The position numbers and the translations under genes were made by a program. A stretch of DNA of 64,000 bases from Macrostomum lignano (lineage: Eukaryota), in NCBI GenBank assembly GCA_002269645.1, contig NIVC01000598.1, positions 780,286 to 844,285 on the forward strand, in the 5' to 3' direction. Of this stretch, positions 1,506 through 57,263 are shown in pieces. The first letter of the stretch is position 1; each line of letters begins with the position of its first letter. The notes under the pieces were generated by a model. It was given only the letters and a program-made list of their open reading frames with translations, was not told where the DNA came from and did not search any database.

Positions 1506-2900
1506 TAAAACAACTTCACAATCGCCAAGCTTCACAATCCAAAAACGTCACAATCCTCAAGCTTCACAATCCTCAAGCTTCACAATCCCCGAACTTCACA
1601 ATCCCCAAGCTTCACAATCCTCAAGCTTCACAATCCCCAAGCTTCACAATCTCCAAGCTTCACAATCCTCAAGCTTCACAACCCTCAAGCTTCACAATCC
1701 CCGAACTTCACAATCCCCAAGCTTCACAATCCTCAAGCTTCACAATCCTCAAGCTTCACAATCTTCAAGCTTCACAATCCCCAAGCTTCACAATCCTAAA
1801 GCTTCACAATCCTCAAGCTTCACAATCCTCAAACTTCCCAATCCCCAAGCTTCACAATCCTCAAGCTTCACAATCCTCAAGCTTCACAATCCTCAAGCTT
1901 CACAATCCTCAAGCTTCGCAATCCCCAAGCTTCATAATCCCCAAGCTTCACAATCCTCAAGCTTCACAATCCCCAAGCTTCACAATCCTCAAGCTTCACA
2001 ATCCTCAAGCTTCACAATCCTCAAGCTTCACAATCCCCAAGCTTCACAATCCCCAAGCTTCACAATCCTCAAGCTTCCCAATCCTCAAGCTTCACAATTC
2101 TCAAGCTTCACAATCCCCAAGCTTCACAATCCCCAAGCTTCACAATCCCCAAGCTTCACAATCCCCAAGCTTCACAATCCCCAAGCTTCACAATCCTCAA
2201 GCTTCACAATCCTCAAGCTTCACAATCCCCAAGCTTCACAATCTTCAAGCTTCACAATCCCCAAGCTTCACAATCCTCAAGCTTCACAATCCCCAAGCTT
2301 CACAATCCTCAAGCTTCACAATTCTCAAGCTTCACAATCCCCAAGCTTCACAATCCCCAGGCTTCACAATCCCCAAGCTTCCCAATCCTCAAGCTTCACA
2401 ATCCCCAGGCTTCACAATCCTCAAGCTTCACAATCCCCAAGCTTCACAATCCCCAAGCTTCACAATCCCCAAGCTTCACAATCCCCAAGCTTCACAATCC
2501 TCAAGCTTCACAATCCCCAGGCTTCACAATCCCAGGCTTCACAATCCTCAAGCTTCACAATCCTCAAGCTTCACAATCCTCAAGCTTCACAATCCCCAAG
2601 CTTCACAATCCCCAAGCTTCACAATCCTCAAGCTTCACAATCCTCAAGCTTCACAATCCTCAAGCTTCACAATCCTCAAGCTTCACAATCCCCAAGCTTC
2701 ACAATCCTCAAGCTTCACAATCCCCAGGCTTCACAATCCCAGGCTTCACAATCCTCAAGCTTCACAATCCTCAAGCTTCACAATCCTCAAGCTTCACAAT
2801 CCCCAAGCTTCACAATCCCCAAGCTTCACAATCCCCAAGCTTCACAATCCTCAAGCTTCACAATCCTCAAGCTTCACAATCCTCAAGCTTCACAATCCTC
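1506..2900. repeat. 16-bp minisatellite (CAAGCTTCACAATCCY)n, array 1
   Basis: Seen directly. It is flanked on both sides by a 56-bp direct repeat (1450-1505 and 2901-2956). Confidence 0.97.
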
Positions 2901-3444
2901 AAGAATCCTTGGAGCAACTGCCAAGGGCGCCTCAAATAGGGTGTAAAACAACAATGGAGCAAATTACCGAGGGGGGGGTTGACAAAAGACAAAAGACAGA
3001 AGATCAAGTGCAGAAAGAACTGGATCCAGCATGCAAAGAGCCGGGGAGACGGGAGAGAGAAAAGTGGCCTTGAGGAGGCTGCGGCAAGGTCATGGGGAGC
3101 AAGTCCATCATCACGTGTTGGGGCCATACGTCAGCGGATGCATCTTAAGCTGTTTCATGAAGTGCAGATGCGCAGGGCAGGGAAGACGTCCATGCAGTGC
3201 TGGAGACGTGAAAAAAAATATTATGCAAGGACCAACTAAACAGAACAGCCTTGAAGTGGAATGAAGAGAACTTACAAAAGAGAAAGTTGAGTGTTTCTGC
3301 TAGTTATCTACTTGAGTCTGAGAGACAAACACGCTAGAGGCACTGCTTGAGTTGACAGTGCGCATGAGGATCTGGTTTGGATGCCGGATTGAAAGAAGTT
3401 CAGAGAGCTAAACTTAGCTGCGGCAACGAAGCGATGGCGCATGC

Positions 3445-4680
3445 ATCTTCACAATCCCCAAACTTTTCAATTCTCAAGCTTCACAATCCTCAAGCTTCCC
3501 AATCCTCAAGCTTCACAAACCCTAAGTTTCAAAATCCTCAAGCTTCACAATCCCCAAACTTTTCAATTCTCAAGCTTCACAATCCTCAAGCTTCCCAATC
3601 CTCAAGCTTCACAAACCCTAAGTTTCACAATCCGCAAGCTTCACAATCCTCAAGCTTCACAATCTCCAAGCTTCACAATCCTCAAGCTTCACAACCCTCA
3701 AGCTTCACAATCCCCGAACTTCACAATCCCCAAGCTTCACAATCCTCAAGCTTCACAATCCCCAAGCTTCACAATCCCCGAACTTCACAATCCCCAAGCT
3801 TCACAATCCTCAAGCTTCACAATCCTCAAGCTTCACAATCCCCGAACTTCACAATCCCCAAGCTTCACAATCCTCAAGCTTCACAATCCTCAAGCTTCAC
3901 AATCTCCAAGCTTCACAATCCTCAAGCTTCACAACCCTCAAGCTTCACAATCCCCGAACTTCACAATCCCCAAGCTTCACAATCCTCAAGCTTCACAATC
4001 CTCAAGCTTCACAATCTTCAAGCTTCACAATCCCCAAGCTTCACAATCCTAAAGCTTCACAATCCTCAAGCTTCACAATCCTCAAACTTCCCAATCCCCA
4101 AGCTTCACAATCCTCAAGCTTCACAATCCTCAAGCTTCACAATCCTCAAGCTTCACAATCCTCAAGCTTCGCAATCCCCAAGCTTCATAATCCCCAAGCT
4201 TCACAATCCTCAAGCTTCACAATCCCCAAGCTTCACAATCCCCAAGCTTCACAATCCTCAAGCTTCACAATCCTCAAGCTTCACAATCCCCAAGCTTCAC
4301 AATCCCCAAGCTTCACAATCCTCAAGCTTCCCAATCCTCAAGCTTCACAATTCTCAAGCTTCACAATCCCCAAGCTTCACAATCCCCAAGCTTCACAATC
4401 CCCAAGCTTCACAATCCCCAAGCTTCACAATCCCCAAGCTTCACAATCCTCAAGCTTCACAATCCTCAAGCTTCACAATCCCCAAGCTTCACAATCTTCA
4501 AGCTTCACAATCCCCAAGCTTCACAATCCTCAAGCTTCACAATCCCCCAGCTTCACAATCCCCAAGCTTCACAATCCCCAAGCTTCACAATCCCCAAGCT
4601 TCACAATCCTCAAGCTTCACAATCCTCAAACTTCCCAATTCTCAAACTTCACAATCTGCAAACTTGAACAATCCCGAGAC
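3445..4680. repeat. 16-bp minisatellite (CAAGCTTCACAATCCY)n, array 2
   Basis: Same unit as array 1. It produces the spurious ORFs 3377-4735 and 3441-4052. Confidence 0.97.
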
Positions 4681-5356: not shown

Positions 5357-6209
5357 TTAACTGCACAGAGAGCCGTCCACCTGAGCGATGCTCACCTTGC
5401 CGAAGACTTCACCGTTGCCGCCTGTCGTTCCCGTGGCCTGCTTGCCGGATGAGCTCGCGTAGCTGCCGCCGCCGCCTCCGTAGCCGTTACTGCTGTCGCC
5501 GGGTCCTCCGCAGCCGCCAGAGTAGCCGCCTCCTCCGCCGCCGCCTCCATCTTCATCATTGTTGTTGCCGCCTCCGCCGCCTCCACCGTAGCCGCCGAAG
5601 CCGTTGCTGCCCGGCCCTCCGTTGCCTCCGGCCCAGTTGCCGCCGATGCTTCTTCCACCGTGGCCTCCGTTTTTGTCAGTGGCCAGGGCTGTTCCATCTG
5701 AGCTCCAACCAGCTCCGCCCGCGCCAGAGTTTCTAAAGCTTTCACCGTCACCGCCTTGTCCGTCGGATGTGTCGCAAGAGCCTCCGGTGCTGCTTGTTCC
5801 GTCCTTACCGATCGTCGAAGAAGATGCGGCGCCGCCGCCTCCTCCGCCACCGGCCACCAGTAGCAGCGTGCTGGGGCCGGTTGTGTACACAAAGCTGCCG
5901 CCTCCTCCGCCTCCTCCGCCGCTGCTGCCTCTGTTTCCCGGCTTGCCAACAACAAGCGTGAGAGTTTGCGACGTGGTCAGCATGAAATTGGCGCTCTTGA
6001 ATGCGCCTCTGCCGCCGTTCGCGTTAGCGGATGACTTGCCGCCTCTGGCGCCCCAAGCCGAGATTCGATAGCAGCCGTCGGTCGGCGGAGTGAAAGTCTG
6101 CACCGATCCAGTTTGGTTGCTCGAGTCCGACGGAGGAGCTGGAGGGAGTTCGATGGAATTTGAGTTTTTATTGCAAGGACCATTGTCGTACAACAGCTGG
6201 TGTAAAACT
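5357..6209 (-). CDS. Terminal exon encoding an ALK/LTK-like glycine-rich domain
   Basis: The ORF contains GSVQTFTPPTDGCYRISAWGARGG...GGRGA...LTLVVGKPG...GGGGGSFVY...LLLVAGGGGG...GGYSGG...GGGGGSY, the motif order of the ALK/LTK glycine-rich domain. Candidate splice acceptors lie at 6210 and 6197, and the stop is at 5357-5359. No transmembrane segment is present. Confidence 0.85.
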
Positions 6210-7099: not shown

Positions 7100-8430
7100 A
7101 CAAATATTAGAGATTTAGTTAAATAAAGGTAAATATCAACATGAAGTATTATTTGAGTTGCCGATGCATTTCGTCCATTTGCATTAGGACATCGTCAGGG
7201 TCTTTTTATTGAGAAACAATTTGAACGAATATTCAGTATATATAGATAGTTGAGAGTAACAAGAGTAGTTGAATTGAGTTTTTAATTGATGGTTTAAAAC
7301 TTGTACATAGTAATCAATTTTTTGATACAGTATTGGTTGGGTAAAGTGCATATCAGTTTCAAGCCAGTCCGGTCATTGACAAATCAGCTAAAAAATTCTG
7401 AGTTGACGGCTAGCCCCACCCATCGCAAGTTGGTTATTTAACGTGGGCTGTTTGGTCTTAATGTACAGGGCTTCTAATAGGCAGAGCATGTGATCTCTAT
7501 TACAAAAATCAATAGCCTTTATCATTTCGTGTGGTTCAGCCTCACAACAAGAATTGCAGGTTAGCAGGTGTTCGTTAATAGCAGAGTTTTTTAGCCAGTG
7601 CTCTCTGACCCTCGTGTATAAGTGTCGTTTAGTTTTTCCTATGTAGGAGATGCTCTGGTCCTCAGAGCAAACAAATTTATACACGACACCAGCCGCGAGA
7701 GGACGTGGAACACTGGATTTCAACTTGCAGACAAACTTAGCAATCTTTTCGGTGCGAAACACAACACGGATTTGAGTGTTTAAGTCTTTACGGAGCAGCT
7801 TTTCTAACTTCTTTTTAAACTCTATAGAACAAACACCAAAGTAAGGCAAAGTGATCAAGGGACATTCAGAGGTGGAATCACGAACTTTCAACCGATTAGG
7901 TTCAGTCAGTTTGTCATTGAGAAAAGAGTTGACAATTTTCATCACAAAGTTCTTAGGATAGCCATTGTAGCTGAGCAGATTGGTGAGGATTTCAACTTCG
8001 TTGTGGAAAAGTCTCCAAGAGCTGCAAGTGGAAAAAGCCCGGTGAAGAAAGCAACGAATCAATCCGGTTTTCCATTGTCTAGGGCACAAGGCGTCAAACC
8101 TAAGCATAAGCCCGGTAAAGCTAGGTTTCCTATACACGCTGGTCGAAATAGTTTCATCGGTGGCGTCAACGTCAATGTCTAAGAAAGGAAGTCTTCTGCC
8201 TCCCCCCTCCACCGTGAATTTGATATTCTCATGAATAGAATTGATTAACTTAAAAAACTCGTCCTTCTTAGCTTCGTCCTCAAAGATCGCAAACGTGTCA
8301 TCGACGTAGCGTTTGTAGAAGTGAGGCGCACAAGGGAGGGCCATCCAGTCCTTCTCCCAGTCCTTCTCCCAGAGATTTAGTATATTTAGATTTTTGGAAT
8401 GCACATCTACCTCCCGTGAGGACACTTTAG
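7100..8430 (-). mobile_element. 5'-truncated Penelope-like retroelement (RT C-terminus + GIY-YIG endonuclease)
   Basis: ORF 7388-8425 has FYKRYVDDTFAIF, LPFLDI, VYRKPSFT and LPYFG, then the GIY-YIG motif VVYKFVC...YIGKTKRHLYTRVREH...LEALYIK...PTLN. A hammerhead motif lies downstream. Confidence 0.95.
7161..7200 (-). ncRNA. Minimal type I hammerhead ribozyme in the Penelope 3' (pLTR) region
   Basis: Minus strand reads CC-CTGACGA-T-GTCC-TAATGCAAAT-GGAC-GAA-ATGCAT-C-GG. It has the core CUGANGA and GAAA, a 4-bp stem II, a palindromic AUGCAU stem III and an AUC cleavage triplet. Confidence 0.75.
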
Positions 8431-12377: not shown

Positions 12378-13990
12378 TCCTCCAAAGTCAGTAGAGACCG
12401 CAGTGTTTGTACATGTACATAATACATGTACCTTCAATTCCAAATTTATAATACGCGCGAGCGTAAAAGTATACATTTCTATATCTTCAAATCTATAGGT
12501 TTACCTTATATCAGAAAATATGTCCAGAAAAAGCATTTTTGGAGAAAGGGAGCTTGGTTTCATACTATACATGTAGGCTACTGTGTATTTGGGTACTGTG
12601 TACTGCACACATGTGCACATGTGAACATTGATCACATTTGAACATACATAGTTTTGGCAAGCTGGACACCGACTTGTGAATATAGGCGAGTAAAACATTG
12701 TTTTACATGTATATGTATCGCTCAACACAACGCTATTTCGTCCATTTTTGGGCGCAACTGTGTGATATGTCGAGGGGGACAAGAAAACTAGTTGTTTGCA
12801 GGCTAAAAAATTGGGTCTTTCGCGTCACAATTTCGACTGAGCCTTTGCATGATACTATTTTAATCCAAAAAGCTTCGCGAGGAGCAAGCTTTATATGAAG
12901 CAAATCCAGAAGTAAGCAAAAGACATTTTTAGACTTTGCCACAAAGGTGAGTTTCGTTTTGCGTTCTATTTATAATTTAAATTACAATAAACTGTTAACT
13001 ATTAAAACAAGTTTTCTCCTAAGTTTAATGAAAAACGCTGATATACATATGCCTTCGCCAGATATGTATTAGTTTTACATAATAAATTTACAGAAAAGCA
13101 AATTTTTGCTCTTAATATACAAAAGATTGTTGTCAACCAAATATATCATCCCGCCTATTCAATGAGGCTTTTCATGATGATCGCTGAGATCCATTCGAGT
13201 TCGAGCCAAGAGAGGCCACCTATGCAAAAACGAACTGTAGGCTGTAGCCCAAACGCCGATAATCGTTTGAGAGTAATTATCAGCACTTTTCTTCAAGTTT
13301 TTTGAAACATCGAAAATTCAATTCAGTTCAATGAAGTTCAGTTCAGTTCAGCTCAATTCAATTCACCAGTTCCCAATTACTGTTTTTTTCGCAGGCATGA
13401 TATCTGTTAATTTTTTGCATTTTATTTGGCTTTTAGTATTTTTACTGCTAGAGAAATATAAGAACAACTTTTTGTTTCAAAATTAAATATTTAATTTTGC
13501 AAATCACTAGTTTTCTTAGGTAGACAGACAATAAAATTTGAAATTTCTACATTATTTTTTAGCAAAATACTAAATAATAGGTTAAGGCCAGATATACTAG
13601 TAGGCTACAGCCTGGTTGGACTGGAATGATCTTAGCCTACATCCAAATGGTCTAGTCTGAATTTTCAGAAAATTTCTTGTTTATTTCTAGAAAATTATTA
13701 GAATTAAAAAATGTATAATATATTTTAAATATATGTCTATGTTAAGTTGGGATCTTCATGTGTAACTTTGCCTTTATATATTTTTTGCTTTTATGTGCTA
13801 GTTAATGGATTTTTAAGTTAATAATTTTAGTTAATAAAGCATTATTGTATTGCTGCTTTGCTAGTTTAGAATTGAAGTTTTTGTTTAAGACAACTATTAT
13901 TATTCAAATTTTGTATCCTTATATATACATAATCATAACTAATTTGTGGTAAAATTAAATAATAACAATTTTTTTCTTCATGGCGACTGG

Positions 13991-16900
13991 ATGAATCGCC
14001 AGCAGCAGCTGTCCAGACTGAATCAACAGCAATGGGTGAGAGAGATTGATAGCCACCTGCGGCTGGGAGGCCAGCGCCTGCGCGCCAAGCAATCCTCGGA
14101 GGCGCTGGACAGCTACCAACGCGCCTACCGACTGGCCCTGCGCCTCGCCGACGCCAAACTGATCCGCGCATGCGCCTTCAATTTAGGCGCCTGCCTTGTG
14201 GCTCGCGGCGACTACGACAAAGCGGTGAACTATCTGCAACTGGTGCTGCCCTCCGAGCGGGACGAGCCTCCCGTGCCCTATGTGGCCGACGTGCACTTTA
14301 ACCTGGCCGTGGCGCACGATCGCCTTGGCAACGCCGAGGCCGCCCAGGAGGCCTACAGGACTGCCTTCCTGCTGTACGGCGGCGCCGACAAGCCGCAGCT
14401 GCAGTGCGAAGTGGCGCTGAAAATTGCCAGGTAAGTTTGGATGCTAAAATTGAACTATCGCTAATTTCTGACTTGAAAACTTAATTTCGATTTATATCGT
14501 CCATATGCAAGTTGTCAGTTCAAAATGATTAACTTCGATGATCTGTTGAAAGTTACTTTCGATACATATCGTCAAAACGCTTGTATGCAGTTTTTCAGTT
14601 CTAAATGGTTAACTTCGTTGATCAACTGAAGATTCATTTCGATACATATCGTCAAAACGCTTGTATGCAGTTTTTCAGTTCTAAATGGTTAACTTCGTTG
14701 ATCAACTGAAGATTCATTTCGATACATATCGGCTCTAAACTGTTTTCCTCTAATTAATTAGCGACGCCGAATCTCGCGGCAACAACGCGGAGGCGCGCTC
14801 CTATTATCTGGCCGCGATGCAGGCCTGCCAGGGCAACCAGGCGCTCACCGAGTGGCGGCTCCGTTGCCAGGTGAAGCACGCGGCTGTCAGTCATCGGCTT
14901 GGCGACGACAGGCCGCTTGAAGGCCTAGCGGAGTGCGAGTCCGCTGCGCACCTGGTGCCAGGCAGGGCTGCCAGGGTGCAGCTGCTGAATGAAATCGGAA
15001 TTACCTATATGCAAGCTAACAGGTAAAGCTTTCTAGTATAAATTCAGTAAATAACTCGATTAGAAATACTAGCGTCTACTAGTAGGGACACTAGCAGGAC
15101 ATCGGGACACTAGCAGGACATCGGGACACTAGCAGGACATCGGGACACTAGCAGGACATCGGGACACTAGCAGGACATCGGGACACTAGCAGGACATCGG
15201 GACACTAGCAGGACATCGGGACACTAGCAGGACATCGGGACACTAGCAGGACATCGGGACACTAGCAGGACATCGGGACACTAGCAGGACATCGGGACAC
15301 TAGCAGGACATCGGGACACTAGCAGGACATCGGGACACTAGCAGGACATCGGGACACTAGTAGGGCATGCGGACACTGTCAACTCAACTGTCCCAATCGT
15401 CAGGTACTCTGCCGCGGCGGAATCTTTTACATCTGCCATGCACTCGGTCGGCGGCGTCGGTGGTGACGACCCGGCCTTTCAACGGGCGGCGCTGTTGCAG
15501 AACTTGGCGGGCGCTCTGACGGCCCTCGGGCGTCACCGCGAGGCGCTGGCAAAGTACACAGAGACTGTCAGGCTGTTTAGGTCAGCCACAACGCCTAGCA
15601 GCCAGGGTTTGGGCCACTGCTACCTCAACATGGCGCTCTGCTATGCCCACCTAAAACGGGTGAACAGCAGCGCGGAGTCCTACGAGATGGCGCTGCAGTT
15701 TGCTAAGGAGGCCGGTTGGTGGAATCCTCGCTTGTTGCTTTGCTAAATTTCTTTAAAAAACAAACACAACGATTTCTAGTGACTGAATAATCTGAAGTTT
15801 TGTGAAGTTAATAATTAGTTTAATTCTAGGATACAACGACCAGTCATTAGTCACAGAGATTAGTAGTTACAAATACTTGTCAGTAGTTACAAAGACTTGT
15901 CACCAGTTGCAAAGACTTGTCACCAGTTACAAAGACTTTTCACCAGTTACAAATACTTTTCAGTAGTTACAAAGGCTTGTCACCAGTTGCAAAGACTTGT
16001 CACCAGTTACAAAGACTTTTCACCAGTTACAAATACTTTTCAGTAGTTACAAAGACTTGTCACCAGTTGCAAAGACTTGTCAGTGGTTACAAAGACTTGT
16101 CAGTGGTTACAAAGACTTGTCACCAGTTACAAGGACTTGTCAGTGGTTACAAAGACTTGTCAGTGGTTACAAAGACTTGTCAGTGGTTACAGAGTTGTCA
16201 CCAGTTACAAAGACTTGTCACCAGTTACAAAGACTTGTCACCAGTTACAAAGACTTGTCACCAGTTACAAAGACTTGTCAGTAGGTACAAGACTCGAATC
16301 CTAATCTCCAGGCGACAAGACCACCCAGTGGCAGGCGCTCGAAGGTCTCGGCGCGGTGGACTTCAACTCTGGACACAATCAATCGGCCACGGCCAGGTTT
16401 GCCGAGGCCCTGGCGCTCGCTAGCGACACCGAGGAGGCCCGGGTTCGAATCGCCGCCAAGCTTCAACGTGCCGGCGGCGGTGGCAGTCGCCGTAGCCGCG
16501 GCGGCAGTGGGCGTCGGCATCGGTGGAGCAGCGAACTTCCAGGAGGCAGCCGCCGAAGTGGCAGCTTCCTGCAGGGAATCGACGAAGACGGCGGCGACAG
16601 CCTGTTGGGCGGTTTCGGCGACGGAGTCGAAGGCGAAGGTGCGGACGACAGCGAGGAGGAGCCGGAGGAGGTGCAGGAGGCGCGGCGACGACTACGGCAG
16701 GCAGTTTACGGAGAGCCCGCCTATGGTTTGTCAACCGAAAAGGTTGGTGTTGCTGCTGCTGGTGTCACTGAGGTCAGGGGTAGCTCAGGTGTCATGGAGG
16801 CCAGGGGTAGCTCAGCTGTCATGGAGGCCAGGGGTAGCTCAGGTGTCATGGAGGCCAGGGGTAGCTCAGGTGTCATGGAGGTCAGGGGTAGCTCAGGTGT

Positions 16901-17358
16901 CATGGAGGCCAGGGGTAGCTCAGGTGTCATGGAGGTCAGGGGTATCTCAGGTGTCATAGAGACCTGGAGGTACCACGAGTGCCATGGCGCAGGTCAGAGG
17001 GTGTCTCAGGAGTCACAGAGGTCAGGAGGAGTAGGGTGGCTAATATCTCACTGCGAGATGAAATGGAATTAAAATATTTTGCTCTGTACCTGCCGCAGGT
17101 GTCCGATGAGACAGAGAAAGCTTACGAAGCCCAAACATCAGAGAGGGACTCTGAATCTGAGGACGAGGATGAGCAAAATGACAACAACGAAAGCATCGAC
17201 AAGGAATTGGTCGTGCCAAAAAAATCAAGGAAGAATGCCGCTGGGGTTCAAGGCAGGAATGCATTGGGCAGGTGAGTAAAACAGCTTCCTGATGAAGGTT
17301 GGTTATTGAATAGTTAGTTAGTTAGTCAGTCAGTCAATTACTTAGCTACGCTCGTAGC

Positions 17359-26998: not shown

Positions 26999-27789
26999 TT
27001 TAGTAGCTTTTAAATTTGAAAGAATTCTCACAAAGAATGCTGTACCTTCGAAGCTACTAAGTTATCAAAATTGATGAATATTGTACTCGTAAAATTGTAA
27101 TGAAAACTTTAGTGAGTGGTGTGCAGATTTTTAAAAGTACGTTTAATAAGCTGCTATACAGGTAGATAAATATTTATTGTGTGCATGATGCAATTTGCGC
27201 CGCGGAGGCCCCAGTTTAGCATGTTGCTGACTGTAGCGTGAATTCAAGCTGTTCTGTCAGTTAATATGCAAAAACCAATTATAAAAAGAAAAAAAATTCA
27301 GGTTTAAAAAGCGTATAGATTACTATTATTATTAGTGCTCGGAATTCTGTAATTTACTTTTTTGTATTCGATAACTTCTCTGTGTTTCATTTCTCTGTGA
27401 TGCTTTATTTACATCTGATTGCATAACTTTGTAAAAGTACATTAGATATACTTTCCTCCACAACGTACATAAATGGTGCACGCGAGACCTACCATACTTT
27501 TAGAATATTAATGAGCTAATTTAAACTGACTTCTTAAGCTTTCATGCCTGTTTTTTCTTCTGAGTACAAAACTATTCTTGAAGAAGATTGCGGATATTAA
27601 AACACACGCCTGTTAGAAAGTTTTTTTATTTTCTAAGAATAAAATGACTTTGCGGTCTTTGCCGTATTTGAATATCTCAAATATTTTTACGATAGCTTTG
27701 AAACTATCTAAAAAGACGGTGTTGTGTAATTGTAATCTTTTTTTAGACTGAACTCTTCGGAAATCTGTAAAGAAGTGGAGAACTAGATT

Positions 27790-30700
27790 CAATGACTGAG
27801 AGAGAGGAGAGAGGCAGATTCAATGACTGAGGGAGAGGAGAGAGGCAGATTCAATGACTGAGGGAGCGGAGAGAGGCAGATTCAATGACTGAGGGAGCGG
27901 AGAGAGGCAGATTCAATGACTGAGGGAGCGGAGAGAGGCAGATTCAATGACTGAGGGAGAGGAGAGAGGCAGATTCAATGACTGAGGGAGCTGAGAAAGG
28001 CAGATTCAATGACTGAGGGAGCGGAGAGAGGCAGATTCAATGACTGAGGGAGCGGAGAGAGGCAGATTCAATGACTGAGAGAGAGGAGAGAGGCAGATTC
28101 AATGACTGAGGGAGAGGAGAGAGGCAGATTCAATGACTGAGGGAGCGGAGAGAGGCAGATTCAATGACTGAGGGAGCGGAGAGAGGCAGATTCAATGACT
28201 GAGGGAGCGGAGAGAGGCAGATTCAATGACTGAGGGAGCGGAGAGAGGCAGATTCAATGACTGAGGGAGCGGAGAGAGGCAGATTCAATGACTGAGGGAG
28301 CGGAGAGAGGCAGATTCAATGACTGAGGGAGCGGAGAGAGGCAGATTCAATGACTGAGGGAGCGGAGAGAGGCAGATTCAATGACTGAGGGAGCGGAGAG
28401 AGGCAGATTCAATGACTGAGGGAGCGGAGAGAGGCAGATTCAATGACTGAGGGAGCTGAGAGAGGTAGATTCAATGACTGAGGGAGCGGAGAGAGGCAGA
28501 TTCAATGACTGAGGGAGCGGAGAGAGGCAGATTCAATGACTGAGTGAGAGGAGAGAGGCAGATTCAATGACTGAGGGAGCGGAGAGAGGCAGATTCAATG
28601 ACTGAGGGAGCGAGAGAGGCAGATTCAATGACTGAGGGAGCGGAGAGAGGCAGATTCAATGACTGAGGGAGCGGAGAGAGGCAGATTCAATGACTGAGGG
28701 AGCGGAGAGAGGCAGATTCAATGACTGAGGGAGCGGAGAGAGGCAGATTCAATGACTGAGGGAGCGGAGAGAGGCAGATTCAATGACTGAGGGAGCGGAG
28801 AGAGGCAGATTCAATGACTGAGGGAGCGGAGAGAGGCAGATTCAATGACTGAGGGAGCGAGAGAGGCAGATTCAATGACTGAGGGAGCGGAGAGAGGCAG
28901 ATTCAATGACTGAGGGAGCGGAGAGAGGCAGATTCAATGACTGAGGGAGCGGAGAGAGGCAGATTCAATGACTGAGGGAGCGAGAGAGGCAGATTCAATG
29001 ACTGAGGGAGAGGAGAGAGGCAGATTCAATGACTGAGGGAGCGAGAGAGGCAGATTCAATGACTGAGGGAGCGAGAGAGGCAGATTCAATGACTGAGGGA
29101 GAGGAGAGAGGCAGATTCATATGTTGAGGGAGCGGAGAGAGGCAGATTCAATGACTGAGGGAGCAGAGAGGCAGATTCAATGACTGAGGGAGACGAGAGA
29201 GGCAGATTCAATGACTGAGGGAGAGGAGAGAGGCAGATTCAATGACTGAGGGAGCGGAGAGAGGCAGATTCAATGACTGAGGGAGACGAGAGAGGCAGAT
29301 TCAATGACTGAGGGAGCGGAGAGAGGCAGATTCAATGACTGAGGGAGCGGAGAGAGGCAGATTCAATGACTGAGGGAGCGGAGAGAGGCAGATTCAATGA
29401 CTGAGGGAGCGGAGAGAGGCAGATTCAATGACTGAGGGAGCTGAGAGAGGTAGATTCAATGACTGAGGGAGCGGAGAGAGGCAGATTCAATGACTGAGGG
29501 AGCGGAGAGAGGCAGATTCAATGACTGAGGAGAGGAGAGAGGCAGATTCAATGACTGAGGGAGCGGAGAGAGGCAGATTCAATGACTGAGGGAGCGAGAG
29601 AGGCAGATTCAATGACTGAGGGAGCGGAGAGAGGCAGATTCAATGACTGAGGGAGCGGAGAGAGGCAGATTCAATGACTGAGGGAGCGGAGAGAGGCAGA
29701 TTCAATGACTGAGGGAGCGAGAGAGGCAGATTCAATGACTGAGGGAGCGGAGAGAGGCAGATTCAATGACTGAGGGAGCGGAGAGAGGCAGATTCAATGA
29801 CTGAGGGAGCGGAGAGAGGCAGATTCAATGACTGAGGGAGCAGAGAGAGGCAGATTCAATGACTGAGGGAGCAGAGAGGCAGATTCAATGACTGAGGGAG
29901 CGGAGAGAGGCAGATTCAATGACTGAGGGAGCGAGAGAGGCAGATTCAATGACTGAGGGAGCGGAGAGAGGCAGATTCAATGACTGAGGGAGCGGAGAGA
30001 GGCAGATTCAATGACTGAGGGAGCGGAGAGAGGCAGATTCAATGACTGAGGGAGCGAGAGAGGCAGATTCAATGACTGAGGGAGAGGAGAGAGGCAGATT
30101 CAATGACTGAGGGAGCGAGAGAGGCAGATTCAATGACTGAGGGAGCGAGAGAGGCAGATTCAATGACTGAGGGAGAGAGAGAGGCAGATTCAATATGTTG
30201 AGGGAGCGGAGAGAGGCAGATTCAATGACTGAGGGAGCAGAGAGGCAGATTCAATGACTGAGGGAGACGAGAGAGGCAGATTCAATGACTGAGGGAGAGG
30301 AGAGAGGCAGATTCAATGACTGAGGGAGCGGAGAGAGGCAGATTCAATGACTGAGGGAGACGAGAGAGGCAGATTCAATGACTGAGGGAGCGGAGAGAGG
30401 CAGATTCAATGACTGAGGGAGCGGAGAGAGGCAGATTCAATGACTGAGGGAGCGGAGAGAGGCAGATTCAATGACTGAGGGAGCTGAGAGAGGTAGATTC
30501 AATGACTGAGGGAGCGGAGAGAGGCAGATTCAATGACTGAGGGAGCGGAGAGAGGCAGATTCAATGACTGAGGGAGAGGAGAGAGGCAGATTCAATGACT
30601 GAGGGAGCGGAGAGAGGCAGATTCAATGACTGAGGGAGCGAGAGAGGCAGATTCAATGACTGAGGGAGCGGAGAGAGGCAGATTCAATGACTGAGGGAGC

Positions 30701-33672
30701 GGAGAGAGGCAGATTCAATGACTGAGGGAGCGGAGAGAGGCAGATTCAATGACTGAGGGAGCGGAGAGAGGCAGATTCAATGACTGAGGGAGCGGAGAGA
30801 GGCAGATTCAATGACTGAGGGAGCGGAGAGAGGCAGATTCAATGACTGAGGGAGCGGAGAGAGGCAGATTCAATGACTGAGGGAGCGAGAGAGGCAGATT
30901 CAATGACTGAGGGAGCGGAGAGAGGCAGATTCAATGACTGAGGGAGCGGAGAGAGGCAGATTCAATGACTGAGGGAGCGGAGAGAGGCAGATTCAATGAC
31001 TGAGGGAGCGAGAGAGGCAGATTCAATGACTGAGGGAGAGGAGAGAGGCAGATTCAATGACTGAGGGAGCGAGAGAGGCAGATTCAATGACTGAGGGAGC
31101 GAGAGAGGCAGATTCAATGACTGAGGGAGAGGAGAGAGGCAGATTCAATATGGTTGAGGGAGCGGAGAGAGGCAGATTCAATGACTGAGGGAGCAGAGAG
31201 GCAGATTCAATGACTGAGGGAGACGAGAGAGGCAGATTCAATGACTGAGAGAGAGGAGAGAGGCAGATTCAATGACTGAGGGAGCGGAGAGAGGCAGATT
31301 CAATGACTGAGGGAGACGAGAGAGGCAGATTCAATGACTGAGGGAGCGGAGAGAGGCAGATTCAATGACTGAGGGAGCGGAGAGAGGCAGATTCAATGAC
31401 TGAGGGAGCGGAGAGAGGCAGATTCAATGACTGAGGGAGCGGAGAGAGGCAGATTCAATGACTGAGGGAGCGGAGAGAGGCAGATTCAATGACTGAGGGA
31501 GCGGAGAGAGGCAGATTCAATGACTGAGGGAGCGGAGAGAGGCAGATTCAATGACTGAGGGAGCGGAGAGAGGCAGATTCAATGACTGAGGGAGCAGAGA
31601 GGCAGATTCAATGACTGAGGGAGAGGAGAGAGGCAGATTCAATGACTGAGGGAGAGGAGAGAGGCAGATTCAATGACTGAGGGAGCGGAGAGAGGCAGAT
31701 TCAATGACTGAGGGAGACGAGAGAGGCAGATTCAATGACTGAGGGAGCGGAGAGAGGCAGATTCAATGACTGAGGGAGCGGAGAGAGGCAGATTCAATGG
31801 CTGAGGGAGCGGAGAGAGGCAGATTCAATGACTGAGGGAGCGGAGAGAGGCAGATTCAATGACTGAGGGAGCGGAGAGAGGCAGATTCAATGACTGAGGG
31901 AGAGGAGAGAGGCAGATTCAATGACTGAGGGAGCGGAGAGAGGCAGATTCAATGACTGAGGGAGCGGAGAAAGGCAGATTCAATGACTGAGGGAGCGGAG
32001 AGAGGCAGATTCAATGACTGAGGGAGCGGAGAGAGGCAGATTCAATGACTGAGGGAGCGGAGAGAGGCAGATTCAATGACTGAGGGAGCGGAGAGAGGCA
32101 GATTCAATGACTGAGGGAGCGGAGAGAGGCAGATTCAATGACTGAGGGAGCGAGAGAGGCAGATTCAATGACTGAGGGAGCGGAGAGAGGCAGATTCAAT
32201 GACTGAGGGAGCGGAGAGAGGCAGATTCAATGACTGAGGGAGAGGAGAGAGGCAGATTCAATGACTGAGGGAGCGGAGAGAGGCAGATTCAATGACTGAG
32301 GGAGAGGAGAGAGGCAGATTCAATGACTGAGGGAGAGGAGAGAGGCAGATTCAATGACTGAGGGAGCGGAGAGAGGCAGATTCAATGACTGAGGGAGAGG
32401 AGAGAGGCAGATTCAATGACTGAGGGAGCGGAGAGAGGCAGATTCAATGACTGAGGGAGCGGAGAGAGGCAGATTCAATGACTGAGGGAGAGGAGAGAGG
32501 CAGATTCAATGACTGAGGGAGAGGAGAGAGGCAGATTCAATGACTGAGGGAGCGGAGAGAGGCAGATTCAATGACTGAGGGAGAGGAGAGAGGCAGATTC
32601 AATGACTGAGGGAGAGGAGAGAGGCAGATTCAATGACTGAGGGAGAGGAGAGAGGCAGATTCAATGACTGAGGGAGCGGAGAGAGGCAGATTCAATGACT
32701 GAGGGAGAGGAGAGAGGCAGATTCAATGACTGAGGGAGCGGAGAGAGGCAGATTCAATGACTGAGGGAGAGGAGAGAGGCAGATTCAATGACTGAGGGAG
32801 AGGAGAGAGGCAGATTCAATGACTGAGGGAGAGGAGAGGCAGATTCAATGACTGAGGGAGCGAGAGAGGCAGATTCAATGACTGAGGGAGCGAGAGAGGC
32901 AGATTCAATGACTGAGGGAGAGGAGAGAGGCAGATTCAATATGGTTGAGGGAGCGGAGAGAGGCAGATTCAATGACTGAGGGAGCAGAGAGGCAGATTCA
33001 ATGACTGAGGGAGCAGAGAGGCAGATTCAATGACTGAGGGAGAGGAGAGAGGCAGATTCAATGACTGAGGGAGCGGAGAGAGGCAGATTCAATGACTGAG
33101 GGAGCGGAGAGAGGCAGATTCAATGACTGAGGGAGCGAGAGAGGCAGATTCAATGACTGAGGGAGCGGAGAGAGGCAGATTCAATGACTGAGGGAGCGGA
33201 GAGAGGCAGATTCAATGACTGAGGGAGCGGAGAGAGGCAGATTCAATGACTGAGGGAGCGAGAGAGGCAGATTCAATGACTGAGGGAGCGGAGAGAGGCA
33301 GATTCAATGACTGAGGGAGCGAGAGAGGCAGATTCAATGACTGAGGGAGCAGAGAGGCAGATTCAATGACTGAGGGAGAGGAGAGAGGCAGATTCAATGA
33401 CTGAGGGAGCAGAGAGGCAGATTCAATGACTGAGGGAGCGGAGAGAGGCAGATTCAATGACTGAGGGAGCAGAGAGGCAGATTCAATGACTGAGGGAGAG
33501 GAGAGAGGCAGATTCAATGACTGAGGGAGCGGAGAGAGGCAGATTCAATGACTGAGGGAGCGGAGAGGCAGATTCAATGACTGAGGGAGCGAGAGAGGCA
33601 GATTCAATGACTGAGGGAGCGGAGAGGCAGATTCAATGACTGAGGGAGCAGAGAGGCAGATTCAATGACTGA
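27790..33672. repeat. 31-bp minisatellite array of about 5.9 kb (GAGGGAGCGGAGAGAGGCAGATTCAATGACT)n
   Basis: Seen directly; roughly 190 units, with variant blocks recurring at about 1-kb spacing. Confidence 0.98.
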
Positions 33673-34931: not shown

Positions 34932-52621
<17,690 letters not shown>

Positions 52622-53471
52622 TATCAATTGAATTTTTTGTTTTTCTAGTATGATACGACACGAGCATCTATAATGAACAACGCGCGTGAACCTGTTTTAT
52701 GCTGATTTTAAGCTCGTGCGAAATTTTATTTTCGACCGTGAAAGCACCATAACAAAATTCCCAAATATGTTATCTTGATATTTCTATTAATGATATTATT
52801 TATTTATTCTGTGTCACCTTTTAAAAATTATGAAAATATGTATATTTTCATTTGGAGTCTTGTAGAGAAATTTTTTTCGAAAAAGACAGCTCGCTATCTC
52901 TATAATTGCTTTGGATATGATTGTTAAGGTATATTCGTACCCTCAAAAGAAGCCATGCCAAAAATCACTAGACGAAACTTAAATATTGTATAACTCTACA
53001 GAATTCCATAAATAAATTTCAATCAACACAAATTTCAACACAAAATCATGACTGCAGTCTGGCTCAAATTTGCTATTTTGTGCTATTTGTATCTCATTTT
53101 TTTTTTTGCTTTTGATCGAACTGTAATCTTCCTTTGCAATTTTTATCAGAAAAGATAAGCCAGCCCAGGACGTTAATTATATACTTAAGATAGAATCCGA
53201 TTACAAACTTCACCATTGGTATTTAGCAGAGTTACAAGCATAGTATAACAAAAGAAAAGACTTTTTTATCTGATCGATGTAAACAATATGAAGCAATGGT
53301 TTACATATGCATACATGTAGCTGTAATCAAGTCAACCAATAAATACGTTACAATTGTATATCAAACTGAATTAATGAATCCTAATAATTACGAATCTTTG
53401 ATACCAAAGCAAGGCTGTACTATCTTAAGTTTTCAGAGCAGGGCCAAGTAAATATATTAGCTTTGTTAGGC

Positions 53472-53582
53472 AGCCGCGGAAGCGCGGCTTGTCAAAAATT
53501 GAGTAGATCGCTCAATTGGATCCACGCGGTGTCTTACCATGCAAAATATTGAGTCTTCGCAGTAAGAGACCGTCAAAACGGC
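53472..53582 (-). ncRNA. Spliced-leader (SL) RNA gene, flatworm type
   Basis: Minus strand: leader GCCGTTTTGACGGTCTCTTACTGCGAAGACTCAATATTTTGCATG (53582-53538, ending in AUG), donor GTAAGA, Sm site AATTTTTGA (53500-53492) and 3' hairpin AGCCGCG-CTTC-CGCGGCT (53489-53472). TCTTAC in the leader pairs with the donor GTAAGA. Confidence 0.9.
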
Positions 53583-53796
53583 AAAGAGAGTGGAATGGAA
53601 AACGCTCTCCAACAGTGCACAGCTCTGCGCTTGAGCCGCGAGCCCTAGGGCAAATGATTATGTTGAATTTCATCTACTCCAAGTAAGTTATGCCGACTAG
53701 TGCAGCATTCTTGTGCACTGCAGCTTGAAAAGACGCGCCAAAAAGTGTGCAGCTCTGCCTTTCTTTTAGCCGACATGTTTAGAACGCGCCGCTTAA

Positions 53797-57100: not shown

Positions 57101-57263
57101 AAAAGACAACAGCATTTGGTCAACGACCCAACTGTAACTTCTAGTGGTCCTTGCATTTGGTATTCCCAGGCGGTCACCCATCCAAGTACTAACCAAACCC
57201 AAAGTTACTTAATTTCGATGATCAGACGAGAACCGGTGTTTGCAACGTGGTATGGCCGTTGCC
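57101..57263 (-). pseudogene. 5S rRNA: 5S rRNA gene copy interrupted by a 32-bp insertion
   Basis: Minus strand: GGCAACGGCCATACCACGTTGCAAACACCGGTTCTCGTCTGATCATCGAAATTAAG...GGTTAGTACTTGGATGGGTGACCGCCTGGGAATACCAAATGC-[insert]-ACCAAATGCTGTTGTC-TTTT. Removing the insert and one repeat copy gives 118 nt with a complete helix I and a T-run terminator. Confidence 0.9.

What the first reader, a model, noticed from the sequence alone, without database searches (positions are those of the whole stretch)
53472..53582. Solitary spliced-leader RNA gene with a possibly variant leader
Seen: an AUG-terminated leader of about 45 nt, a GTAAGA donor base-paired with the leader (GGTCTCTTAC/GTAAGACACC), an Sm site AAUUUUUGA and a 7-bp GC 3' hairpin, about 111 nt in total. 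Established: flatworm SLs end in AUG, and SL RNAs have this layout. From memory, the main Macrostomum lignano leader is CCGTAAAGACGG...CAATTTATTGCATG. This copy differs in the first loop (TTTT) and near the 3' end (TATTTT). It also appears here as a single copy rather than a tandem array. Inference: it is a minor SL isoform or the SL of a related species. The ORF track does not show it.
Basis: partly seen in the sequence, partly recalled or inferred. Interest (0 to 1): 0.75.

Follow-up and report, generated by a model that had tools for sequence, protein, structure and literature searches.

The report
Flatworm spliced-leader RNA gene, variant leader
This is an intact gene for the small RNA that flatworms of the Macrostomum group use to put a common 5' leader on many mRNAs; its leader differs at 5 of 45 bases from the one so far found unchanged in every Macrostomum examined, but I could not test whether it is used.

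Summary
On the minus strand, 53582->53472 is a 111-nt Macrostomum-type SL RNA gene. It has a 45-nt leader ending in AUG, a GUAAGA donor held in an 11-bp helix with the leader, a second hairpin, a single-stranded Sm site (AAUUUUUGA) and a 7-bp GC-rich 3' hairpin.

The leader is 40/45 identical to the published leader shared by M. lignano, M. cliftonense and M. hystrix. I found that same canonical leader in two environmental SL RNA genes (L004, L007) and on four environmental mRNAs. The five differences fall in loops, or swap one pair for another.

The intron half is only 68-72% identical to the environmental genes, yet all functional elements are kept. In a neutral-decay simulation at that divergence, 0 of 3000 sequences kept them. 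So it is not an old pseudogene.

It is single-copy in the window, but so are both environmental genes, so being solitary is not unusual.

Two things remain unresolved: the source species, and whether any mRNA carries this leader. The nearest protein is M. lignano at 34-36%. It is either the regular SL of a macrostomid lineage not yet described, or a second SL class, or a recently silenced copy.

This is a new member of a known kind, of moderate interest.

The parts
53472..53582 (-). SL RNA gene, 111 nt from the inferred first base (G of GCCG) to the last base of the 3' hairpin
   Evidence: Sequence. The 5' end is inferred from the published 45-nt leader that starts GCCG and from the shared YTCTTT|GCCGT boundary in three genes. 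Three-hairpin fold.
53538..53582 (-). Leader (mini-exon), 45 nt, ending in AUG (53540-53538). It is 40/45 identical to the canonical Macrostomum leader; the differences are at nt 6-8, 36 and 38.
53532..53537 (-). Splice donor GUAAGA. The first 11 intron bases, GTAAGACACCG, are identical in the window, L004 and L007.
53527..53572 (-). Stem-loop I. Leader nt 11-22 pair with nt 45-56 (last base of the AUG plus the donor), 11 bp with one C/C mismatch. An inner 6-bp helix, GCGAAG/UUUUGC, is included.
   Evidence: Predicted folds; consensus fold (all pairs invariant in the three genes).
53503..53525 (-). Stem-loop II, GUGGAUC(C)...GAUCUAC. The self-complementary GAUC core is shared with L004 and L007, but the helix extends outward here and inward in those two.
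53492..53500 (-). Sm-binding site AAUUUUUGA, single-stranded between hairpins II and III
   Evidence: The weak U5 and SmY Rfam alignments anchor on this motif.
53472..53489 (-). 3' hairpin AGCCGCG-CUUC-CGCGGCU, 7 bp. It shares AGCC/GGCU with the 5-bp hairpins of L004 and L007. When the hairpins are read in structural register from the shared AGCC/GGCU base, the fifth pair is G-C here and C-G there; the MAFFT alignment does not place these columns in register.
53457..53467 (-). Candidate 3' box AACAAAGCTAA. L004 has AATAAAGTTGAA and L007 has TATAAACGTAAA at the same distance. There is no T run, and the gene holds an internal T5, so Pol II is the expected polymerase (inference).
   Evidence: function inferred only
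53583..53588 (-). CTCTTT directly upstream of the first base, shared with L004 (CTCTTT) and L007 (TTCTTT); no TATA box seen
53615..53628 (-). Proximal copy of the motif GCAGAGCTGTGCAC, at -34 to -47. A candidate promoter element (inference).
   Evidence: the motif occurs only twice in 64 kb (0.19 expected), both times upstream of this gene.
53745..53758 (-). Distal copy of the motif, GCAGAGCTGCACAC, at -164 to -177

Best explanation
This is a structurally intact SL RNA gene, maintained by selection, belonging to the Macrostomum SL RNA family.

How it most likely works (inferred): it is transcribed as a ~111-nt snRNA-type RNA, probably by Pol II, because there is no TATA box, there is an internal T5 run, and a conserved A-rich box follows the 3' hairpin. 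It binds Sm proteins at AAUUUUUGA. It presents its GUAAGA donor in a helix with the leader. It then donates its 45-nt AUG-terminated leader to pre-mRNAs by trans-splicing.

The leader is a sequence variant, with 5 of 45 bases changed from the leader that is otherwise invariant across the genus.

What is shown: homology, all the structural elements, and a pattern of change that preserves structure. What is inferred: transcription, Sm binding and use on mRNAs.

I lean towards it being the ordinary SL RNA of a macrostomid lineage other than the three characterised species (about 0.45 of total probability). The alternative is a second SL class sitting beside the canonical one (about 0.25).
For: 1. 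Homology. The leader is 40/45 identical to the published leaders. The first 11 intron bases are identical to two canonical genes. GATCCAAT, AGCC...GGCT and the upstream YTCTTT are shared.

2. Architecture. The window copy, L004 and L007 all fold to the same three-hairpin layout with a single-stranded Sm site.

3. Where the leader changes fall. Three are in the loop of the 5' CCGU-NNNG-ACGG mini-hairpin. A38->U turns an A/A mismatch into an A-U pair, while U36->A removes the neighbouring terminal pair, so the inner helix stays at 6 bp (sequence).

4. Intron half. It is 68-72% identical to L004 and L007, which are 85% identical to each other. Hairpin II, the Sm site and hairpin III are still kept. 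The Sm site fits RAU(n)GR better than in the canonical genes, and hairpin III is longer (7 bp against 5 bp).

5. Neutral-decay simulation from a canonical gene, with 5 leader and 17 intron substitutions. Of 3000 sequences, 0 kept AUG-GU, the donor helix, two hairpins and the Sm site together. The single criteria were kept in 35%, 10%, 5% and 0.2%.

6. Evidence leaning towards another lineage. The nearest relative of the MAP1-like exon, among 1.84 billion representatives, is M. lignano PAA88284.1 at only 34-36%. An intact 345-aa Penelope-like ORF has no relative above 68% identity among 5.8 billion clusters.
Against: - No expression evidence of any kind. The variant leader was not found on any sequence outside the window. 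It is absent from IMG/VR and from full-text papers.
- All four environmental mRNAs recovered carry the canonical leader.
- The peptide-proxy search for SL-bearing transcripts failed its own positive control, so it says nothing either way.
- A leader that is 100% conserved across three species and several environmental sequences, yet changed at 5 positions here, could also mean relaxed constraint on a redundant copy.
- The neighbouring 5S rRNA gene is interrupted by a 41-nt insertion. This hints that the region may hold orphaned small-RNA genes.
- The species argument is weak. The MAP1-like exon looks like a divergent paralogue: it lacks the YVFPxGxGDS motif that M. lignano and P0122 share.
Confidence: 0.7

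Rival explanations
1. Silent orphan copy. On this reading it is a dispersed SL RNA gene that was functional for most of its history, or was recently copied from a functional variant. It is no longer transcribed, or is transcribed too weakly to matter.
For: - It is single in the window.
- It sits in a window where 46% of the bases are tandem arrays.
- It lies 3.5 kb from a 5S gene disrupted by a 41-nt insertion.
- The leader departs from an otherwise invariant sequence.
- Upstream sequence shows no clear conserved promoter element shared with L004 or L007 beyond YTCTTT.
- SL RNA pseudogenes are reported in other flatworms (PMC12582326).
Against: - Every functional element is intact, and some are closer to consensus than in the canonical genes.
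- 0 of 3000 neutral-decay simulations kept them all, so any inactivation would have to be recent.
- The pseudogenes reported in PMC12582326 were recognised by loss of the AUG or the donor, and neither is lost here.
Confidence: 0.25
2. The 5' end of a trans-spliced mRNA, or a retro-copy of one, rather than an SL RNA gene. This is the same error that PMC8629364 reports for the first published M. lignano 'SL RNA'.
For: Only the presence of the leader sequence itself.
Against: The leader is followed by GTAAGACACCG, hairpin II, an Sm site and a 3' hairpin. These are homologous to the intron halves of L004 and L007, and they are not coding sequence. True mRNAs (L001-L003, L005) continue into 5' UTR and ORF straight after ATG.
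Confidence: 0.02
3. A chance resemblance, or a different Sm-class snRNA such as U5 or an SmY-like RNA.
For: Weak Rfam matches to U5 (19.1 bits, E=5.4) and SmY (12.6 bits, E=7.5).
Against: Both matches are far below the gathering scores (40 and 39 bits) and rest only on the Sm site plus the terminal hairpin. The 24-nt leader core has a chance expectation of 0.01 per window. blastn against the canonical genes gives E=7e-20.
Confidence: 0.01

Closest known systems
Macrostomum lignano SL RNA (109-bp gene, eight copies in the deduplicated Mlig_3_7 assembly; 35-nt leader CGGTCTCTTACTGCGAAGACTCAATTTATTGCATG; PMC8629364), together with the identical leaders of M. cliftonense and M. hystrix (PMC10468722, Table S3)
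   Same: Same length class (111 against 109 nt). Leader at the 5' end forming the first hairpin, a GTAAG donor, an Sm-like site between two further hairpins, and a terminal AUG. 40 of 45 leader bases are identical.
   Different: Five leader substitutions: AAA->UUU at nt 6-8, U36->A and A38->U. I could not compare the intron half with M. lignano itself, because the published sequence is only in a figure. The published search for the gene required 100% matches, so a variant like this one would not have been reported.
Environmental canonical SL RNA genes found here: L004 (Ga0302322_100095745, 614-718) and L007 (JAGQZA010000190.1, 1588-1691, a flatworm contig binned into a Flavobacteriaceae MAG)
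   Same: Identical GTAAGACACCG, shared GATCCAAT, an AGCC/GGCU hairpin base, upstream YTCTTT, an A-rich box after the 3' hairpin, the same three-hairpin fold, and one copy per contig.
   Different: Their leaders are 100% canonical and their intron halves are 85% identical to each other, against 68-72% to the window copy. Their Sm-like site is AUUUUUAG, against AAUUUUUGA here. Their 3' hairpin has 5 bp, against 7 bp here.
Multiple SL classes in other flatworms: Schmidtea mediterranea SL trans-splicing (cited in PMC12582326; the SL1/SL2 naming is from my own knowledge) and the many SL RNA paralogues of cestodes and trematodes (PMC12582326)
   Same: SL RNA paralogues with slightly different leaders, all ending in AUG, coexisting in one genome. 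Some are clustered and some dispersed.
   Different: In parasitic flatworms the paralogues are reported to be used interchangeably, and the Sm site there is an interrupted U stretch. For Macrostomum only a single SL has been described so far.
Nematode SL1 RNA genes linked to 5S rRNA genes in one tandem repeat unit (from my own knowledge, not tested here beyond coordinates)
   Same: A 5S rRNA gene lies 3.5 kb upstream on the same strand.
   Different: There is no repeated 5S-SL unit in the window. Each gene occurs once, and the 5S copy carries a 41-nt insertion.

Membership tests
Flatworm (Macrostomum-type) SL RNA gene | Leader homologous to a leader known to be trans-spliced | tested here: met
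   40/45 identical to the published M. lignano, M. cliftonense and M. hystrix leaders. blastn to canonical genes: 69 nt at 90% identity, E=7e-20.
Flatworm (Macrostomum-type) SL RNA gene | Leader ends in AUG and is followed directly by a GU donor | tested here: met
   ...TTGCATG|GTAAGA at 53540-53532.
Flatworm (Macrostomum-type) SL RNA gene | Donor site held in a helix with the leader (stem-loop I) | tested here: met
   11 bp with one C/C mismatch in the minimum-free-energy and centroid folds. The same helix appears in L004 and L007. All pairs are invariant, so there is no covariation evidence.
Flatworm (Macrostomum-type) SL RNA gene | Single-stranded Sm site flanked by two hairpins; total length ~100-110 nt | tested here: met
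   AAUUUUUGA is unpaired between a 7-8 bp hairpin II and a 7-bp hairpin III; total 111 nt.
Flatworm (Macrostomum-type) SL RNA gene | Leader found at the 5' ends of unrelated mRNAs | tested here: inconclusive
   The canonical leader was found on 4 environmental mRNAs. The variant string is absent from IMG/VR and from papers. The protein-level proxy failed its positive control. No reads of the source species were reachable.
Flatworm (Macrostomum-type) SL RNA gene | Trimethylguanosine cap and Sm-protein binding of the RNA | not testable with these tools
   Needs anti-TMG or anti-Sm immunoprecipitation and a northern blot.
Flatworm (Macrostomum-type) SL RNA gene | Several copies or a tandem array (common, but not defining) | tested here: not met
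   One copy in 64 kb. L004 and L007 also hold one copy each. Non-clustered SL RNA genes are known.
Rfam-curated SL or Sm-class snRNA families (SL1, SL2, SmY, U5 and others) | Score at or above the family's gathering threshold | tested here: not met
   No hit at gathering threshold. The best are U5 at 19.1 against 40 bits and SmY at 12.6 against 39 bits. No flatworm SL RNA model matched.
5S rRNA-SL RNA linked tandem repeat | 5S and SL RNA genes alternating in a repeated unit | tested here: not met
   One 5S copy (57103-57263, minus strand, interrupted) and one SL RNA gene. No repeat unit joins them.

The most novel reading that the evidence does not exclude
The window comes from a Macrostomum species that also has the canonical leader, and this gene encodes a second, expressed SL class. 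It would be the first for a genus described as having a single SL. Published discovery methods would have missed it: one used 19-mers seen more than 1000 times, the other required 100% BLAST matches. A second class would open the question of whether it is specialised, for example for operon-internal genes or for a tissue.
Probability: 0.25. Interest if true: 0.55.

Novelty: new member of a known kind. Interest (0 to 1): 0.35.

Why it matters
Macrostomum is a regeneration and stem-cell model in which 20-30% of genes are trans-spliced. Its annotation pipelines trim and map reads using one fixed leader sequence.

If this variant leader is used, reads that carry it are currently neither trimmed nor counted. 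Trans-spliced gene starts and operon boundaries would then be under-called.

If it is instead the regular leader of another macrostomid lineage, it gives the first look at which leader positions are free to change in a sequence that is otherwise frozen across the genus: two loops and one compensated pair.

Either way it is an incremental finding for specialists. It is not a new kind of system.

Tried and rejected
1. Rfam, at gathering and at permissive thresholds. No SL RNA family matches; there are only sub-threshold U5 and SmY hits.

2. Peptide proxy for leader use. The leader is open in the frame of its AUG (variant AVLTVSYCEDSIFCM, canonical AVKTVSYCEDSIYCM), so gene calls cut at the 5' edge of a contig might carry this peptide. 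Local simulations showed that a sharpened profile would detect both forms. The padded profile found no protein sharing three 5-residue words. The canonical peptide shares five words with the query, so the positive control failed and the result is uninformative.

3. Searches for the variant string. IMG/VR: 0 hits; the canonical core also gives 0 there, so that collection holds no Macrostomum sequence. Full-text papers: 0 hits.

4. Identifying the organism.
- The MAP1-like exon found nothing in the word-indexed search.
- The exhaustive search gave M. lignano as nearest, at only 34-36%. The exon looks like a divergent paralogue, so it is a poor clock.
- The nearest relative of the Penelope-like ORF is 68% identical, in Logan run SRR31628435, whose organism I could not establish.
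- Satellite consensus strings are not in any paper.

5. The idea that the upstream region holds a decayed second leader copy. Local alignment of the upstream 250 nt against the gene is no better than shuffles (p about 0.6) in all three loci. Rejected.

6. A shared promoter element among the window, L004 and L007. Only YTCTTT at the start site, and a weak AGTAGR at about -95 to -100, are shared. Not convincing with three sequences.

7. Covariation. With three sequences all stem-I pairs are invariant. The consensus fold counts one double-sided change (pair 101/111 of its stem III), but the MAFFT alignment does not put stem III in structural register, so this does not confirm the G-C/C-G swap that I read by hand. 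There is no statistical support from covariation.

Full report
**What is there**

The feature reads on the minus strand. From 53582 down to 53472 the sequence is GCCGTTTTGACGGTCTCTTACTGCGAAGACTCAATATTTTGCATG|GTAAGACACCGCGTGGATCCAATTGAGCGATCTACTCAATTTTTGACAAGCCGCGCTTCCGCGGCT.

Positions below count from 53582 as nt 1. Folding gives three hairpins (z about -3.3):
- Leader nt 11-22 pair with nt 45-56, which are the last base of the AUG plus the donor. This helix has 11 bp and one C/C mismatch.
- An inner helix, GCGAAG/UUUUGC, has 6 bp.
- Hairpin II spans 53525-53503.
- An unpaired stretch holds AAUUUUUGA (53500-53492).
- The 3' hairpin, AGCCGCG/CGCGGCU, has 7 bp (53489-53472).

**Is it more than chance?**

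The 24-nt leader core occurs once in the window, against 0.01 expected. blastn with word size 7 and an nhmmer profile find no second copy, even a diverged one. No Rfam family covers it. Only sub-threshold U5 and SmY alignments appear, and they anchor on the Sm site and the terminal hairpin.

**Comparison with known leaders**

- M. cliftonense: GCCGTAAAGACGGTCTCTTACTGCGAAGACTCAATTTATTGCATG.
- M. hystrix: the same, less the first two bases (PMC10468722 Table S3).

The window leader differs at five positions: A6-A8 to U, U36 to A, and A38 to U. That makes 40/45 identical.

**Related sequences from elsewhere**

One scan of JGI metagenome contigs for the shared core gave five loci. Four come from one sample, hold the match at or within a few bases of a contig end, and are mRNAs for a 282-aa ORF that I read as a VDAC-type porin, a 440-aa ORF that I read as an isocitrate dehydrogenase, a 369-aa ORF that I read as an arginine-kinase-like enzyme (these three names are my own reading of the ORF translations, not checked with a tool) and one other. 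All four carry the canonical ...CAATTTATTGCATG.

The fifth locus, L004, holds a complete canonical SL RNA gene upstream of a 382-aa ORF that I read, without checking it with a tool, as a Na/K-ATPase beta-subunit gene. A scan of prokaryotic genome contigs found a second complete canonical gene, L007. It sits on a 3.8-kb flatworm contig that was binned into a Flavobacteriaceae MAG.

This gives two full gene sequences to compare with the window copy. Features shared by all three:
- YTCTTT immediately upstream of GCCGT
- the intron start GTAAGACACCG
- GATCCAAT
- an AGCC...GGCT hairpin base
- an A-rich box, AAYAAAG-like, a few bases after the 3' hairpin
- no TATA box

All three fold into the same layout. 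Identities are as follows:

| Pair | Leader | Intron half |
|---|---|---|
| Window vs L004 / L007 | 89% | 72% / 68% |
| L004 vs L007 | 100% | 85% |

Both environmental genes are single on their contigs. A solitary gene is therefore normal for this family. Dispersed SL RNA genes are also reported for other flatworms (PMC12582326).

**Pattern of change**

The three changes at nt 6-8 lie in the loop of a possible CCGU-NNNG-ACGG mini-hairpin. A38->U converts the A27/A38 mismatch of the canonical fold into an A-U pair. U36->A removes the adjacent terminal A29-U36 pair. The inner helix therefore stays at 6 bp (compare the folds).

The AUG, the donor and all 11 pairs of the donor helix are untouched.

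In the much more diverged 3' half:
- Hairpin II is rebuilt around the same self-complementary GAUC core.
- The Sm site fits RAU(n)GR better than the AUUUUUAG of the canonical genes.
- Hairpin III is longer.

I simulated neutral decay from a canonical gene at the observed divergence, using 5 leader and 17 intron substitutions. None of 3000 sequences kept AUG-GU, the donor helix, two downstream hairpins and an Sm site together. So most of the divergence accumulated under selection for SL RNA function. An old decaying pseudogene is excluded. A recently silenced copy is not.

**Promoter**

A 14-nt motif, GCAGAGCTGYRCAC, occurs only twice in the window. Both copies lie upstream of this gene, at -34 to -47 and at -164 to -177 (0.19 expected). 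By eye, the similarity extends over about 35 nt. These are candidate proximal and distal elements, but nothing comparable is shared with L004 or L007.

The idea that the upstream region is a decayed leader copy was tested and rejected.

**Whose genome is it?**

This matters for choosing between 'variant paralogue' and 'another species' own SL', and I could not settle it.
- The window is 46% tandem arrays.
- It holds a Penelope-like element ORF, TPR exons and a MAP1-like gene.
- The MAP1-like N-terminal exon has M. lignano PAA88284.1 as its best match among 1.84 billion representatives, at only 34-36%. That places the window among macrostomids. However, the exon lacks a motif conserved between M. 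lignano and the next hit, so it may be a divergent paralogue.
- The intact 345-aa Penelope-like ORF has no relative above 68% identity among 5.8 billion clusters, which include the M. lignano proteomes.

I take this as moderate evidence that the source is not M. lignano.

The only published macrostomorph genomes I could find are M. lignano, M. cliftonense and M. hystrix. All three have the canonical leader as their major SL. The methods used to find it would not have seen a minor variant: one used 19-mers present more than 1000 times, the other required 100% BLAST matches.

**Is it used?**

This was not testable here:
- The variant string is absent from IMG/VR, which holds no Macrostomum sequence at all.
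- It is absent from the paper library.
- A protein-level proxy failed its positive control.

**Verdict**

The gene is a genuine, intact Macrostomum-type SL RNA gene with a leader not described in the literature I could search. My estimates are:
- 0.7 that it is a working gene. This splits into about 0.45 for the regular SL of an uncharacterised macrostomid lineage and about 0.25 for a second SL class beside the canonical one.
- 0.25 that it is a recently silenced orphan.
- Negligible probability for the other readings.

It is a new member of a known kind. It has practical relevance for read trimming and for calling trans-spliced gene starts in Macrostomum.

Noticed in passing
window 57103-57263 (-): A 5S rRNA gene lies 3.5 kb upstream of the SL RNA gene on the same strand. 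It is interrupted near its 3' end by a 41-nt insertion: 32 nt plus a second copy of the 9-nt ACCAAATGC (repeats at 57153-57161 and 57112-57120). Rfam aligns only model positions 8-112. Removing the insert and one repeat gives a 120-nt 5S with a 9-bp helix I, followed by T5. It is probably a disrupted copy, and the direct repeat looks like a target-site duplication or a slippage event.
   Followed up: partly
window, whole (for example 27785-33672, 1514-4656, 47339-49168): About 46% of the 64 kb lies in mini- and microsatellite arrays with units of 4-98 bp. One of them is a 5.9-kb array of a 31-bp unit with 191 copies. Many long 'ORFs' in the window are artefacts of these arrays.
   Followed up: partly
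window 7388-8425 (-): An open 345-aa ORF with the C-terminal part of a reverse transcriptase and a GIY-YIG endonuclease domain. This is a Penelope-like retroelement fragment. Its closest relative is only 68% identical (Logan run SRR31628435); all others are at or below 44%.
   Followed up: partly
window 36712-43932 (-): A MAP1-like gene. Its N-terminal exon has an MBL-like domain (43018-43932), with M. lignano PAA88284.1 as best match at 34-36%. It is followed by a 1492-aa open frame (36712-41190) made almost wholly of 21- to 63-bp tandem repeats that encode PE/VK/TSHE-rich heptads. The conserved YVFPxGxGDS motif is replaced by [10 protein letters not shown].
   Followed up: partly
window 13943-17272 (+): Several exons of a TPR-repeat protein gene (TPR_12, TPR_1 and TPR_2 hits at 13943-14431 and 15342-15743), with tandem arrays in the introns and in a C-terminal exon.
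   Followed up: no
window 5357-6193 (-): A 278-aa ORF rich in glycine runs (GGGGGGGG...), with no Pfam hit. From memory it resembles the glycine-rich extracellular region of ALK/LTK-type proteins. Not tested.
   Followed up: no
L007 (JAGQZA010000190.1), 1588-1691: A contig in a Flavobacteriaceae metagenome-assembled genome (isolate HKST-UBA79) carries a complete canonical Macrostomum SL RNA gene. It is therefore flatworm DNA that contaminates the bin.
   Followed up: partly
L004 5-10 of the gene vs its Sm region: In the minimum-free-energy fold of the canonical gene in L004, leader nt 5-10 (UAAAGA) pair with the U run of the Sm site. The window variant (UUUUGA) cannot form this pairing. L007 does not show it in its minimum-free-energy fold, so the significance is unclear.
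   Followed up: no
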